Shown: positions 35,741-47,189 of the stretch, piece by piece
Position numbering within the stretch: the stretch's first letter is position 1
How the letters are laid out: each line of letters opens with the position of its first letter
Assembly: GCF_006345805.1 (NCBI RefSeq)
Contig: NW_021834549.1
Location: 1 to 47,326, forward strand
DNA from: Octopus sinensis
Taxonomy: Eukaryota
Direction of reading: 5' to 3'
DNA: 47,326 bases
Made by a program: the position numbers and the translations under genes
Notes under the pieces: generated by a model
What the model was told of the DNA's origin: nothing
Databases searched by the model: none
What the model saw: the letters and a program-made list of their open reading frames with translations, nothing else

Positions 35741-36514
35741 TCATGATTGCTAACTGCTGTCAGGGATCCCATTAATAATGCATGGCCAACCAAACAATGC
35801 AAAAAAAGTTGCCTCAGTAAGCATATATAACGCTTTTACATACATATGTAAGTATTGGTGGTATATATGTATATTGAGACAATAAATCGCTCAACTTCAA
35901 AGCCAACTAGACAGTGTATTTGTAATTTATATCTGTTATTCCACTGTGGTCGAACGTGTAACATGATACACTATTGGTAAGTACTGATTCACTCAAAACA
36001 CCGCTTACTATTATGGTCATACTTAGAATAAGTAAAATTATATCTGTCAATTGATAAACGCTTCCAATCCGCTAATGATATTGAAATATAAATTAACCTG
36101 TCTATTTACCTTTTTATTGAGATTCTAAATGTTGCTCCCTCCTACTTCGGTCCAATGTAATTTTTTTAAGTGAAATAATCTTTTTTTTTTACGTATTACA
36201 TTTCTCTGCTCGGTTATAGATACACAACTGTTAACGCTACTATCTAATGCACATGTAATATGCATTACATAATGCGTATGACTATTCTCATCTTTGTGTA
36301 TATATATATATATATTTAAATAAGTGAATGAATTATCCTATGTTTATCGTCAGCATTGAAAATTCGTTGAACCGAAACCAGGGTAGCAAATTCACGTCAG
36401 AAACACAGTTGAAGCGACCTGTCCAAGGGTAGAAACTCCGGGTTCATGTGCAGAAATTTGTGTGTTATATATGAATAAATGAAAGAATGGAGTCGAACGA
36501 AGATGTTAACAAAA

Positions 36515-36611
36515 TTCCTTTACTCTCGACATATGTTTCGAAGACAACATGGTTTCATTCCAAAGGAATAAAGGGTGCATTATGCAATCTTCTCATCAGG
36601 AAAGAAAGGGA
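36515..36611 (-). ncRNA. Type I hammerhead ribozyme, intact core (left arm)
   Basis: Exact reverse complement of the 37152-37248 motif; CTGATGA at 36599-36593, GUC triplet at 36530-36528. Confidence 0.85.
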
Positions 36612-37151
36612 GCCTCTCTCGACAACAAGACAAGCAAACATTTCGATGACTGCCTACATGGTAAACAAAACGATAATGAGTGTTTTTAAAAAAACCGTTA
36701 GAAGAATTGACGCCAAAGATAGATAGTAGGAAGAGAAGGGTTAAAGGAATAATATGTAGGGAACAAGTGGAGAGGGAAGGGTACGTTGATTGAAAGAATG
36801 TTCGAAGGCTTAGGAAAGAATTTCGCTATTTACATACAAATGTAAACACTGGCAGAAATATACTTTCTACTCATATAAATGATAACGATAGTCACTGTGG
36901 TTTGAACAATTAGCTTAACGCGCACTCCACTTCAATAGTGAAATTCTTTCCTTAGCCTTCGAACATTCTTTCAATCAACGTACCCTTCCCTCTCTACTTG
37001 TTCCCTACCTATTATTCCTTCAACCCTTCTCTTCCTACTATCTATCTTTGGCGTCAATTCTTCTAACGGTTTTTTTAAAACACTCCTTATCGTTTTGTTT
37101 ACCATGTAGGCAGTCATCGAAATTTTTGCTTGTCTTGTTGTCGAGAGAGGT

Positions 37152-37248
37152 TCCCTTTCTTTCCTGATGAGAAGATTGCATAATGCACCCTTTATTCCTT
37201 TGGAATGAAACCATGTTGTCTTCGAAACATATGTCGAGAGTAAAGGAA
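37152..37248 (+). ncRNA. Type I hammerhead ribozyme, intact core (right arm)
   Basis: Stem I cctttctttc / gagagtaaagg; CTGATGA 37164-70; stem II GAAGAT..GTCTTC enclosing two hairpins; GAAA 37224-27; stem III palindrome ACATATGT; GUC 37233-35 (predicted cleavage after 37235). Confidence 0.85.
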
Positions 37249-37282
37249 TTTTGTTAACATCTTCGTTCGACTCCATTCTTTC

Positions 37283-37332
<50 letters not shown>

Positions 37333-37420
37333 TTTGGTCATTTTTACGTTGAAACAATTGTAAACCATGGAATAATTGTAATGCCAGATACTCCATTTTT
37401 CACTTATTTATTTATACAAA

Positions 37421-37628
37421 GGCGGCGAGCTGGCAGAGTCATTAGCACGATGGACGTAACGGTTAGCGGTATTCGCGCGTCGCAACGTTATGAGTTCATA
37501 TTCCGCCGAGGTCGACTTTGTCTTTTTTCCTTTCGGAGTCGATAAATTAAGTACCAGTGAAATACTGAGGTCGATGTAATCGACATAATTCTCTCTCCCA
37601 AGCTGTCCTTGTGGAGAAAATTTCAAAT
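37421..37628 (+). mobile_element. SINE family C
   Basis: ggcggcgagctggcagagtc...ccgccgaggtcgactttgtc. Confidence 0.88.
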
Positions 37629-38110: not shown

Positions 38111-39780
38111 TCAAAACCGTAACAGGTATTTTGTTACACGTGGACATGATCCAAAAAGTTCAGTTCTTAAATTTAGACATGTAGCGGGGTCCAAAGAACG
38201 TTTCCTGATGAGCCATCTTTCCATATTACAAAGACCACACTTGCCACTACCGTTGGTATAAGGTTTACACTTGGCCAAGATCTTCCAGTAAATCCTATAG
38301 CTGACATCTTGTTCTTTTAAGAACCATATATGATTGGATAATTTGTTAGTTTCTCATTTATCCCAGTGTCTGAAGCTTAAGGTGTGATTGTTGAACCTTG
38401 CTTTGAAATTCCCTCCATGAGATCCACATGGGTCGTTAATAATGACCTCGGTTATACAGGCTCCATTTAGCGGGCACAAGGTCTTTATCCCTGCAGGAAC
38501 AGCCGACTTTGAGTTGTTGTTTTGCATGTTTTTAAAATTTGAGGTTGAGCTAAACTAATTTTTAGGTTATGCCTATTAAAGAGTTTCCTATATTTATGAT
38601 GTATTGGAAAATATCTATCTATAAGTGACAAAAACTATTTACCTATATTAAAGGTCACTTCGAGGGAGTAAGGGGGTGTGAACCAGATAACTTTCATGTG
38701 TCTGTTTTCTTTTCTTTATTTCTAATAGCAGCTGTGTAAGTTATTTCCTCTTTAAATCCATTAGCTTTAAGGCCTTTTTTATATACTGGGGCAGCATTAT
38801 TAAATATGTTTATATTGGAGGAGAGGCTAGAAATTCTCCTAATATTCTTAACTAAATTCTGTGGGGGCGGACAGGAACTTGCATTAATGTAAATAACTCT
38901 ATCGTTGGGCTCCCTATAGGGTTTGTAAATAGTCTTTTGTAAACTTAGAAACACGTCAAAGAAATTGACAACCGTCAGGCTGGTATCTATTGTTATGTTA
39001 AGATCGAATGTTTTCATAAGATGGATAATATCTTTCTTTAACCGATCTTGCACTGGTCCATTGGTATTCTTAACTAAAGATAGAGCATCATCCCTATAAA
39101 TAGCGAAATATACACCAGGAAAAGCTTTTCCTAACGTGTCAAGCAGGAATAGCCCAATGAGATTGCATATGCCTGCTCAATCATATGACCCCATGCTCAC
39201 ATCGGAAGAACCCTCTGTGTCAGCAGTCTTGACCTTCTCTGTGTTCTCGCTGAAGAGTAAGGTCTTTCTAGCATGGAGGATTATATCTTTATCTTGTTCA
39301 CTAATCTCTGTAAAATCGCTTGCGAAAGTGAGGGCTTTATCTAGCAGTTTTCTAGAAATAGATGCATAGAAGTCTTCAATATCAAATTGTGTAAATGTTG
39401 TTTTATTCTTATTTCTAATTGCTTTAAACCAGTTAAGAACTTCTAAACTATTGGAACATTGTACTAAATTAGTTGCCCCTCTAACTTTAGCATTGATGTT
39501 TCTTAAAATGCCCTTACTAGTTATACCAATTTCTTATTTTGCAGGGTTATTTAGTCTGCATTTAGGATTAGACAGGAAGTTCTTTTTGTGGTCCTTCATA
39601 GTTATAAAGGCCACTTTTTTTTTGGAAGGATCTCTATTCATTTTTATCTAATTTAAACCTAGCTGTGGTGATACTAGCTTCTTTATTAATGTCGTTCTAA
39701 ACTTGTGGTCTAGCTTTAGTGCAATTACTAATAATATTGTTATGTAGGAGTTGTGAGTATGTGATGTTGTCTACAACGTA
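38111..39780 (-). mobile_element. Decayed Penelope-like element: reverse transcriptase plus C-terminal GIY-YIG endonuclease
   Basis: In order on minus: AFITMKDHKKNFLSNPKCRL.NPAK, FTQFDIEDFYASIS, MGSYD, YRDD (39098-39087), YKPYREPND..IYIN, WFTPPYS, CSCRDKDLCPLNGAC, FKARFNNH, WKILAKCKPY..G.GKCGLC, LN.R.E. Several stops and frameshifts. Confidence 0.93.
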
Positions 39781-47039: not shown

Positions 47040-47080
47040 ATTCTTTACAGCTGTTTCGATTTCAGACCTTCAGAAAATTA
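47040..47080 (-). ncRNA. Single degenerate minimal hammerhead motif
   Basis: Minus strand tttt-CTGAAGG-tctgaaatc-GAAAC-AGCT-GTA-aaga; A9 and stem II are imperfect. Confidence 0.45.
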
Positions 47081-47189
47081 ATAAAATTAAAAATTATTTG
47101 TAAGTCGATTCTCTTCAGAGGTAGTTTAAGATATACAAAATAGGTATTCAATTCCTACATGCTGAGTAAACGGTTGCAAACCGTTAACA

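What the first reader, a model, noticed from the sequence alone, without database searches (positions are those of the whole stretch)
36466..37297. 832-bp fold-back with two identical, catalytically intact hammerheads and a branched stem II
All core nucleotides are present in both arms (CUGAUGA, G10.1-C11.1, GAAA, GUC), with a 10-bp bulged stem I. Stem II is unusually long (53 nt) and contains two internal hairpins (tgca-taa-tgca; tttattcc-ttt-ggaatgaaa), unlike the very short stem II of typical minimal PLE hammerheads. By manual count none of the ~10 arm differences falls in the ~100-nt ribozyme; most lie in the inner 220 bp. This is suggestive only, because the numbers are small. The element lies ~3.6 kb downstream of the putative stop codon, so the plus-strand copy could cut read-through transcripts.
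Basis: partly seen in the sequence, partly recalled or inferred. Interest (0 to 1): 0.88.

Follow-up and report, generated by a model that had tools for sequence, protein, structure and literature searches.

The report
Head-to-head Penelope-like retrotransposon ends with hammerheads
The fold-back is two broken tail-ends of an abundant Penelope-like retrotransposon that landed head-to-head in a (TA)n microsatellite, each carrying the family's conserved hammerhead ribozyme; this is a real but ordinary kind of insertion, seen hundreds of times in this genome.

Summary
The inverted repeat and both hammerhead (HHR) cores are real. Arms 36466-36830 and 36934-37297 differ at 10 sites, and stem II is 53 nt. 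This is not a stand-alone element. It is two 5'-truncated, ORF-less 3'-UTR fragments of a Penelope-like element (PLE) with Hydra-clade hallmarks, joined head-to-head inside (TA)n. The composite runs 36299-37297. The extra 167 bp on the left arm is the element's own 5'UTR, so that arm was copied across a 3'UTR-to-5'UTR junction.

The genome holds about 4000 exact long-stem-II HHR motifs. Of 84 listed HHRs of this superfamily, 24 lie in 12 head-to-head pairs, with no tail-to-tail or tandem pairs. Covariation across sister families supports helices I, II and III, with 90% of cells paired against 36-54% in slid controls. Of 22 elements chosen only by RT similarity and long ORF, 20 keep an intact HHR 430-680 nt after the stop.

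No ORF of this family lies upstream in the window, so the "3.6 kb downstream of a stop codon" link fails. HHRs on opposite strands and inverted truncated copies are already described for PLEs. My verdict is a new member of a known kind, of modest interest.

The parts
36299..36316 (.). Left (TA)n tract, the target microsatellite. It merges with the TA-rich outer end of the left copy.
   Evidence: Sequence read. Other copies of the family are likewise flanked by (TA)n.
36299..36465 (-). The 'tail' of the left copy: the first ~167 nt of the element's own 5'UTR, joined in sense to the 3'UTR end. It ends at TA-rich 'site 2' (..TTATTTAAATAT), which lies 48 nt before the ATG in full-length copies.
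   Evidence: It matches 92-96% to sequence lying directly upstream of the ATG in full-length family members (L042, L087 and others). The homologous arrangement occurs in the K1 sister family (L117, L119, L122).
36466..36830 (-). Left arm: 3'UTR positions U102-U465 of the PLE, a 5'-truncated copy.
   Evidence: It is 97-98.6% identical to other genomic copies.
36508..36619 (-). Hammerhead of the left copy. The core runs 36599 to 36528 on the minus strand, and the predicted cleavage is after C36528.
36831..36832 (.). Two-base head-to-head junction between the two truncated copies.
36833..37297 (+). Right copy: 3'UTR positions U1-U465. It ends at TA-rich 'site 1' (..CATTTATTTATATA). Bases 36833-36933 are the fold-back's 'loop': 3'UTR sequence present only in this longer copy.
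37144..37255 (+). Hammerhead of the right copy. Helix I pairs 37144-37163 with 37236-37255. CUGAUGA is at 37164-37170 and helix II at 37171-37223. GAAA is at 37224-37227. Helix III with the palindromic AUAU loop is at 37227-37234. C17 is at 37235.
   Evidence: Covariation is shown.
37298..37329 (.). Right (TA)n tract, the target microsatellite.

Best explanation
What is shown:
- The fold-back is a composite insertion of one family (here called family A) of Penelope-like retrotransposons (PLEs).
- Two 5'-truncated copies of the element's 3' end lie head-to-head inside a (TA)n microsatellite. Neither copy has any ORF.
- Each copy carries the family's type-I hammerhead. In intact members this sits in the 3'UTR about 60 nt before the 3' end.
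- The left copy also carries the first ~167 nt of the element's 5'UTR beyond its 3'UTR end. It was therefore copied from a template in which a 3'UTR is followed by a 5'UTR, meaning a tandem or circular, more-than-unit-length RNA.
- In the sampled pairs of this family, one arm ends at the 3'UTR end (site 1) and the other at the 5'UTR site (site 2). Both sites are TA-rich.

What is inferred:
- The endonuclease breaks the (TA)n target. The two (TA)n 3' ends anneal to the two TA-rich sites of one template RNA, and each primes reverse transcription.
- Both cDNAs stop at arbitrary points and are then joined head-to-head.
- The hammerhead serves the element's RNA, not this locus. Helix III is only 2 bp with a palindromic loop, so it probably cleaves as a dimer. 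It would cut multimeric transcripts to unit length, possibly followed by ligation to circles, as proposed for PLEs and retrozymes.
- At this locus the two ribozymes are passengers in dead fragments. A transcript of either strand would contain only one sense hammerhead.
For: Family and copy structure:
- The arm sequence is a dispersed repeat: 1416 first-look candidates, with the 46 scored matches at 97-100% identity.
- Other copies extend more than 2 kb upstream with variable 5' truncation.
- That upstream sequence encodes an RT/EN ORF.

Protein identity:
- The 35-sequence alignment shows RW(K), DKT, YRDD, a CxCx5C linker, GIY..YIG and CxxC-E...N...CxH. These are the Hydra-clade hallmarks listed in PMC8557442.
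- The AF2 model (pLDDT 76.8) hits telomerase RTs first, at E=6e-10.
- The two best fold hits for the EN domain are GIY-YIG nucleases, Hpy188I and T4 EndoII, but they are weak.

Insertion architecture:
- There are 12 head-to-head HHR pairs, 0 tail-to-tail and 0 tandem among 84 HHRs.
- 3' ends are bimodal: 18 arms end at site 1, 23 at site 2, and 2 are true tandems.
- All 15 family-A inverted pairs have one tailed and one untailed arm; 14 end cleanly at the two sites, and the untailed arm of L027 stops at position 429.
- The tail equals the 5'UTR.
- L093, from a sister family, has 209-nt arms that are 100% identical and flank a near-full-length ORF. Only the inverted arm carries the tail.

Hammerhead:
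- The exact motif occurs 4008 times against 12 in the control.
- 20 of 22 RT-ascertained elements have an intact HHR, and variation falls only at the free positions N7 and H17.
- 90% of cells are paired against 36-54% in slid controls. Seven pairs show compensatory changes.
- Loop III stays palindromic or wobble-palindromic: AUAU, ACGU, AUGU, AUAUAU.
- The cofold dimer scores -54.0 kcal/mol against 2 x -23.3, with an 8-bp intermolecular helix III.

Literature:
- Inverted 5'-truncated copies, a one-sided tail and (TA)n targeting are described in PMC8557442.
- Dual HHRs 100-700 bp apart on opposite strands, and dimer dependence, are described in PMC4209133.
Against: - Rfam's hammerhead models give no hit.
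- Pfam and PDB sequence searches do not recognise the RT or EN.
- GIY-YIG identity at fold level is only suggestive, at E about 0.15.
- The CxCx5C linker of the homologs is absent or degenerate in this genome's copies.
- Cleavage has not been tested, and PLE hammerheads cleave poorly in vitro (PMC4209133).
- All copies retain the sequence downstream of the cleavage site. The reverse-transcribed template was therefore either uncleaved or religated, and the data cannot tell which.
- No pair of direct HHRs was seen within 3 kb among the 84 listed motifs, a window shorter than the ~3.6-kb unit. The two partial tandems seen, L021 and L023, came from the separate 30-locus sample.
Confidence: 0.88

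Rival explanations
1. It is a non-autonomous retrozyme: a short non-coding repeat whose tandem copies are cut by their hammerheads and circularised into small circRNAs.
For: It has a type-I HHR with a 2-bp helix III and a palindromic loop, as in metazoan retrozymes. A 2026 preprint derives animal retrozymes from PLE pLTRs. The window fragments themselves are non-coding.
Against: There is no tandem array: 0 same-strand HHR pairs within 3 kb among 84. Both arms are collinear at 94-98% identity with the 3'UTR and 5'UTR of an RT-encoding element, with variable 5' truncation. The two HHRs lie on opposite strands, so no transcript carries two sense ribozymes.
Confidence: 0.04
2. It is a fold-back or TIR DNA transposon, or a hairpin-RNA gene (miRNA/siRNA precursor), in which the inverted repeat is itself the functional unit.
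For: It has long, 97% complementary arms. Rfam gives sub-threshold hairpin matches: MIR2118 at 47 bits and MIR408 at 26 bits. A read-through transcript would form about 365 bp of dsRNA.
Against: The Rfam hits are to plant miRNA families, far below their gathering scores of 85 and 64, and reflect only the generic hairpin. The inner break-points differ in every genomic pair, for example U102/U1, U255/U291 and U257/U342, so no defined hairpin is conserved. The outer ends are asymmetric, with a 5'UTR tail on one arm only. The arms are retroelement UTRs.
Confidence: 0.04
3. It is an assembly artefact: a palindromic chimera on a small unplaced contig.
For: The window is a 47-kb unplaced contig. Inverted duplications are a known artefact of long-read assembly.
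Against: The arms differ at 10 positions and are asymmetric, with an extra 101 nt on the inner side of one arm and 167 nt on the outer side of the other. The same architecture recurs on assembled chromosomes: 12 pairs in 60 Mb of C1, plus L003, L014-L016, L020 and others.
Confidence: 0.02

Closest known systems
Hammerhead ribozymes of Penelope-like elements (Cervera & De la Pena 2014, PMC4209133)
   Same: Both are type-I HHRs in the terminal repeats or 3' end of PLEs. Both occur in thousands of dispersed, mostly truncated copies grouped in consensus families rich in compensatory changes. Pairs 100-700 bp apart on opposite strands are reported. Helix III is short with a palindromic loop, implying dimer action.
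   Different: Here the core is 'canonical': G10.1 directly follows A9, with no extra bulged nucleotide, and a 2-bp helix III with a tetraloop is present. Helix II is much longer, 53-54 nt with a 12-position lower helix, an internal loop and a distal hairpin, against 7-8 bp in the described min-HHRs.
Hydra clade of C-terminal-EN PLEs (Craig et al. 2021, PMC8557442)
   Same: Both have a single ORF with RT plus a C-terminal GIY-YIG EN. Both show DKT instead of DKG, an RW(K) motif, no CCHH, and CxxC/CxH around the conserved E and N. Both insert into (TA)n and have a canonical HHR near the 3' end. Both show inverted 5'-truncated copies and a one-sided tail. The clade is reported in Mollusca among other phyla.
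   Different: The elements here are about 3.6 kb, against under 3 kb. A long asparagine-rich low-complexity insert separates RT and EN, giving an ORF of 880-914 aa against about 700 aa. The CxCx5C linker is missing or degenerate. The tail is about 167 nt and is identifiable as 5'UTR, against 30-40 bp in the paper. Phylogenetic placement with reference Hydra sequences was not done.
Metazoan non-LTR retrozymes (Cervera & De la Pena 2020, PMC7229834; Li et al. 2026 preprint 10.64898/2026.07.22.740005)
   Same: They have the same ribozyme class and the same helix III logic, and a proposed HHR-cut, ligated circular RNA as the template for reverse transcription. Retrozymes are proposed to be PLE derivatives.
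   Different: Retrozymes are 150-450-bp non-coding tandem repeats. This is a dispersed, 5'-truncated fragment pair of an autonomous element.
Twin priming of LINE-1 (inversion with 5' truncation; from general knowledge, not looked up here)
   Same: Both ends of the target break prime reverse transcription, giving inverted segments joined internally.
   Different: In L1 the second primer anneals internally, so the two segments are different parts of the RNA. Here both arms cover the same 3' region and start at two fixed TA-rich sites 156 nt apart across a unit junction.

Membership tests
Hammerhead ribozyme, type I | Conserved core: C3 U4 G5 A6 N7 G8 A9, G12 A13 A14, A15.1-U16.1, and the cleavage triplet N-U-H | tested here: met
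   Both arms read CUGAUGA ... GAAA ... GUC. Sister families vary only at N7 (U/A/C) and H17 (C/A).
Hammerhead ribozyme, type I | Three helices around the core with helix I open-ended, supported by compensatory changes | tested here: met
   88-90% of cells are paired against 36-54% in slid controls. Eight pairs (alignment A1) and 7 pairs (A3) show changes on both sides. Caveat: A1 and part of A3 were ascertained by a core pattern, so core invariance there is by construction. The stems and the 12 RT-ascertained rows were not.
Hammerhead ribozyme, type I | G10.1-C11.1 closing pair of helix II | tested here: met
   G37171-C37223 in the window. GC in 25 of 31 sequences and G-U in 6 sister-family members.
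Hammerhead ribozyme, type I | Match to curated Rfam hammerhead covariance models | tested here: not met
   No hammerhead hit at gathering score, nor at E<=10 on 36300-37450. My inference is that the 53-nt helix II and the 2-bp helix III are the cause.
Hammerhead ribozyme, type I | Site-specific self-cleavage giving 2',3'-cyclic phosphate and 5'-OH ends | not testable with these tools
   Only folding was possible. The HHR-consistent monomer fold is -20.9 against an MFE of -23.3 kcal/mol. A dimer with an 8-bp helix III is favoured by 7.4 kcal/mol.
Penelope-like element (PLE) | Reverse transcriptase of the telomerase-related type | tested here: met
   This was tested on family members elsewhere in the genome; the window arms have no ORF. 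RT motifs 1-7 are seen in the alignment. The top Foldseek hits of the AF2 model are TERTs, E=6e-10 to 1e-7. Pfam RVT_1 does not hit.
Penelope-like element (PLE) | GIY-YIG endonuclease fused to the RT | tested here: inconclusive
   VVY...YIG...R..NH...E...N motifs are present. The model has beta-beta-alpha-alpha-beta-alpha topology with pLDDT 86.6. The two best fold hits are GIY-YIG nucleases, but at E=0.14-0.16. There is no Pfam hit.
Penelope-like element (PLE) | Insertions are 5'-truncated, in partial tandems (pLTR) and/or with an adjacent inverted truncated copy, with a tail at one end only | tested here: met
   matching the description in PMC8557442.
Hydra clade of PLEs | C-terminal EN, DKT motif, RWK motif, no CCHH, and CxxC and CxH around the conserved E and N | tested here: met
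   Alignment A2 has invariant D107 and K108 followed by T, R22/W23, and C840/C843/E846/N859/C868/H870.
Hydra clade of PLEs | CxCX5C linker upstream of the EN | tested here: inconclusive
   It is present in the homologs (CNCRxxxxxCP). It is absent or degenerate in this genome's L092 ORF, where a low-complexity insert sits instead.
Hydra clade of PLEs | Insertion into (TA)n and a canonical HHR near the 3' end | tested here: met
Hydra clade of PLEs | Phylogenetic grouping with reference Hydra-clade RTs | not tested
   No reference sequences were available; the paper's supplements are not held.
Non-LTR retrozyme | Short (150-450 bp) non-coding units in head-to-tail tandem arrays, each with an HHR | tested here: not met
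   There are 0 same-strand HHR neighbours within 3 kb among 84. The copies are dispersed and collinear with an autonomous element.

The most novel reading that the evidence does not exclude
The inverted-twin insertions follow a strict rule. One arm starts at the 3'UTR end and the other 156 nt further on, inside the 5'UTR of the 'next' unit. This would mean that both ends of the endonuclease-made break prime on one and the same more-than-unit-length template. If that template is a circular RNA made by hammerhead cleavage and ligation, these ordinary-looking fold-backs are genomic footprints of a circRNA retrotransposition intermediate in an autonomous PLE. The unusually long, covarying helix II would then be a lineage-specific adaptation of that ribozyme.
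Probability: 0.25. Interest if true: 0.6.

Novelty: new member of a known kind. Interest (0 to 1): 0.3.

Why it matters
For the window itself it matters little. The fold-back is a dead pair of retrotransposon ends, and any annotation should mask it as PLE-derived repeat rather than as a ribozyme gene or hairpin RNA.

For PLE biology the family is a useful natural data set:
- It offers thousands of young copies.
- Sister lineages have intact ORFs and a strongly covarying hammerhead with an atypically long helix II.
- Insertion end-points show the template carried a 3'UTR-to-5'UTR junction, with two fixed TA-rich priming sites.

That bears on the open question of what PLE hammerheads are for, and whether PLEs retrotranspose from multimeric or circular RNA.

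Tried and rejected
- Rfam at gathering threshold and at E<=10 gave no hammerhead. It gave only sub-threshold plant-miRNA and snoRNA hairpin matches, which I rejected as generic hairpin hits.
- Pfam on 20 window ORFs and on PLE ORF fragments and full ORFs gave nothing useful.
- A PDB sequence search with the 880-aa ORF gave nothing.
- I first took window position 36833 (U1) as the element's 5' end, because many copies aligned from there. Conserved upstream flanks showed this was an artefact of defining the unit from the window.
- I first read U466-632 as an unexplained 'tail'. It was resolved as 5'UTR.
- I looked for the HHR in 3' regions of homologs from other species (Argonauta hians locus L094 and two short contigs, L095 and L096). 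No convincing motif turned up, so there is no cross-species covariation.
- The supplement of PMC8557442 with Hydra-clade HHRs is not held.
- A literature search for octopus PLE hammerheads found nothing specific.
- The arm-difference test for selection is uninformative. The left arm is closer to other copies (98.6% to L011) than to the right arm (97.3%), so most differences are private changes of the right arm.
- The RNAfold z-score of the monomer is unremarkable at -1.23.
Full report
**1. The observation**

The window holds an inverted repeat with arms 36466-36830 and 36934-37297 and 103 nt between them. Aligning one arm to the reverse complement of the other gives 10 differences, 9 substitutions and one indel.

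Each arm carries every core nucleotide of a type-I hammerhead. On the plus strand:

| Feature | Coordinates |
|---|---|
| CUGAUGA | 37164-37170 |
| Helix II (53 nt) | 37171-37223, closed by G37171-C37223 |
| GAAA | 37224-37227 |
| C-AUAU-G | 37228-37233 |
| GUC | 37233-37235 |
| Mirror copy, minus strand | 36599 to 36528 |

One arm difference (37151 versus 36612) lies in the distal part of helix I. The core, helix II and helix III are identical between arms.

The Rfam library does not recognise either copy, at gathering score or at E<=10. The only matches there are sub-threshold hairpin hits to plant miRNA families.

**2. The arms are a dispersed repeat, and longer than the fold-back**

The genome is 2.7 Gb. 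The 168-nt outer arm segment has 1416 first-look candidates, and the 46 scored matches are 97-100% identical.

Mapping 30 loci onto a unit built from the window showed two things.
- The left copy continues 167 bp beyond the inverted repeat, to about 36299.
- The 'loop' of the fold-back is simply extra 3'UTR sequence present in the longer right copy.

The window therefore reads U102-632 on the minus strand, two bases, then U1-465 on the plus strand. Other genomic copies run more than 2 kb further upstream, with a different 5' end in each. That is the signature of a retroelement copied from its 3' end.

**3. The parent element is a Penelope-like element**

The upstream sequence encodes one long ORF. 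Sister families in the same genome have uninterrupted frames of 880-914 aa. More than 8000 first-look RT candidates exist, at 71-94% aa identity among those scored.

Pfam and PDB sequence searches see nothing. A database search found 91 homologs of about 700 aa, mostly on 2.5-3.5-kb contigs. The best named one is from the octopod Argonauta hians.

The alignment shows RW(K), an invariant DK followed by T, RT motifs including GLYRDD, a CxCx5C linker in the homologs, VVY...YIG...R..NH, and CxxC-E...N...CxH. These are the features Craig et al. 2021 list for their Hydra clade of C-terminal-endonuclease PLEs. That clade also has (TA)n targeting and a canonical 3' hammerhead (PMC8557442).

- An AlphaFold model of the 880-aa ORF has pLDDT 76.8. 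It finds telomerase reverse transcriptases as its best structural matches, at E=6e-10, ahead of group II intron, DRT and retron RTs. This fits the known sister relation of PLE RTs and TERT.
- A separate model of the C-terminal 134 aa has pLDDT 86.6. Its two best matches are the GIY-YIG nucleases Hpy188I and T4 EndoII, but only at E about 0.15. I call that inconclusive at fold level.

**4. The fold-back architecture is the family's normal way of inserting**

Among the first 100 listed long-stem-II hammerheads on chromosome C1, 84 belong to this superfamily. Of those, 24 sit in 12 minus/plus (head-to-head) pairs less than 3 kb apart. None sit in plus/minus or same-strand pairs.

In the 30 family-A loci the 3' ends fall at just two places:

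| End point | Arms or loci |
|---|---|
| Site 1 (...CATTTATT[C/T]ATATATA) | 18 arms |
| Site 2 (...TTATTTAAATAT) | 23 arms |
| Continue past site 2 into the ORF | 2 loci (L021, L023) |

All 15 inverted pairs combine one tailed arm (site 2) with one untailed arm. In 14 of them the untailed arm ends cleanly at site 1. In L027 it stops at position 429. If the two arms chose sites independently, this outcome would have a chance of about 2e-5.

Craig et al. describe exactly this architecture: 5'-truncated copies, often with an inverted 5'-truncated copy adjacent, and an extension ('tail') at one end only. Cervera and De la Pena already noted dual PLE hammerheads 100-700 bp apart on opposite strands.

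**5. The 'tail' is the 5'UTR**

In full-length copies the order is 3'UTR end, then tail, then ATG. This holds in family A (L042) and in a sister family (L117, L119, L122). The tail makes up the first ~167 nt of a ~200-nt 5'UTR, and site 2 lies 48 nt before the ATG.

So tailed copies, including the window's left arm, were reverse-transcribed across a head-to-tail junction. The template was longer than one unit, either a tandem transcript or a circle. L021 and L023 are genuine partial tandems of the classical pLTR kind.

L093 shows the whole arrangement in a very young insertion. Its 209-nt arms are 100% identical and flank a nearly full-length ORF, and only the inverted arm carries the tail.

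Both priming sites are TA-rich, and the insertions sit in (TA)n. I infer priming by microhomology between the nicked target and the RNA. The one-of-each rule suggests both break ends prime on one template molecule. These last two steps are inference.

**6. Is the hammerhead under selection?**

Arm differences cannot tell. Inserted copies decay neutrally. The left arm is nearer to other copies (98.6%) than to its partner (97.3%). The informative comparison is between lineages.

The exact pattern CTGATGAG-N35-65-CGAAAC-N2-8-GTC occurs 4008 times, against 12 for the reversed control. The N4-34 version occurs 429 times against 24. Long helix II is therefore the dominant hammerhead type in this genome.

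To avoid circularity I took 22 elements chosen only by RT similarity and long open frame. Of these, 20 have a complete hammerhead 430-680 nt after the stop. Their cores differ from the window's only at N7 (A or C instead of U) and at the cleavage base (GUA instead of GUC). Those are the two positions known to be free.

| Alignment | Sequences | Cells paired | Slid controls | Pairs with compensatory change |
|---|---|---|---|---|
| A1 | 37 | 87.8% | 38-51% | 8 |
| A3 | 31 | 90.0% | 36-54% | 7 |

Six of the seven compensatory pairs in A3 fall in a 12-position lower helix II. Examples are GC/AU at two positions, UA/AU, and GC/GU/AU.

The alternative GCAU/AUGY pairing, which excludes it, is kept in 36-37 of 37 sequences. 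RNAfold also prefers the unbranched form. Helix II is therefore one long interrupted hairpin: a lower helix, an asymmetric internal loop (AAUGCACCC), and a distal UUAUUCC/GGAAUGA hairpin.

Helix III is A-U plus C-G with a loop that stays palindromic or wobble-palindromic across families (AUAU, ACGU, AUGU, AUAUAU). ACAUAUGU is an 8-nt palindrome. Cofolding two copies gives -54.0 kcal/mol against 2 x -23.3, with an 8-bp intermolecular helix III. This is the dimer logic described for metazoan type-I and PLE hammerheads.

**7. What the ribozyme probably does, and what it does not do here**

The cleavage site lies 62 nt before site 1, yet every copy retains the downstream 62 nt. The reverse-transcribed RNA was therefore uncleaved there, or cleaved and religated. 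Either fits the published proposal that PLE hammerheads trim multimeric transcripts to unit length, with possible circularisation. The data cannot choose between them.

At this locus the arms have no ORF, and no ORF of the family lies upstream on the plus strand. tblastn finds only a different PLE on the minus strand at 38207-39647. Pfam finds nothing in the 24-35 kb ORFs. The suggested role in cutting read-through transcripts from a stop codon 3.6 kb upstream has no support. A transcript of either strand would contain one sense ribozyme and one antisense copy.

**8. Verdict**

The sequence features are real and non-random. The thing itself is an ordinary inverted twin insertion of an abundant PLE, and both the ribozyme class and the architecture are already described.

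Not found in the searchable literature are three points:
- this cephalopod-type family and its very long covarying helix II;
- the identification of the tail as 5'UTR;
- the two fixed priming sites and the one-of-each rule.

These are modest additions of interest to PLE specialists. I did not build a full-length consensus of the element, and no step needed to be referred.

Noticed in passing
window 38207-39647 (minus strand): A second, different PLE-like ORF. The RT part is 36% identical to the L092 protein over 308 aa, and there is a C-terminal EN piece with CxxC...E. Its 3'UTR is only about 120 nt before TA-rich sequence, and no hammerhead motif was found in it.
   Followed up: partly
window 47046-47118 (minus strand): A hammerhead-like motif of another family (CUGAAGAG...GAAAC-AGCU-GUA, with a long helix II and a palindromic loop III). 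It resembles a family seen at G000:C1:51573410. It lies close to the end of the window.
   Followed up: no
window 37415-37600: A repeat unrelated to the PLE, matching loci L002 and L003 at 76-87%. Its GGCGAGCTGGCAGAG... start suggests a SINE-like element.
   Followed up: no
loci L097-L100, L108, L114 (sister PLE families, genome G000): Families with long open reading frames carry G10.1-U11.1 instead of the normally conserved G10.1-C11.1 closing pair of helix II.
   Followed up: partly
L092 and L093 ORFs, residues ~470-545 and ~620-750: This genome's PLE proteins are 880-914 aa against about 700 aa in homologs. The difference is long asparagine/serine-rich low-complexity inserts between RT and EN, which the model predicts to be disordered. 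The CxCx5C linker of the homologs is missing there.
   Followed up: no
L093 2281-2489 and 5746-5954: 209-nt inverted arms that are 100% identical flank a nearly full-length ORF, which points to very recent activity of that sister family.
   Followed up: partly
genome G000, one search list: Several other hammerhead families with short helix II are present, for example CUGAUGAG-GCAACGGAAAUUGCC-GAAAC-UGAC-GUC. In total the short-helix-II pattern gives 429 exact matches against 24 in the control.
   Followed up: no
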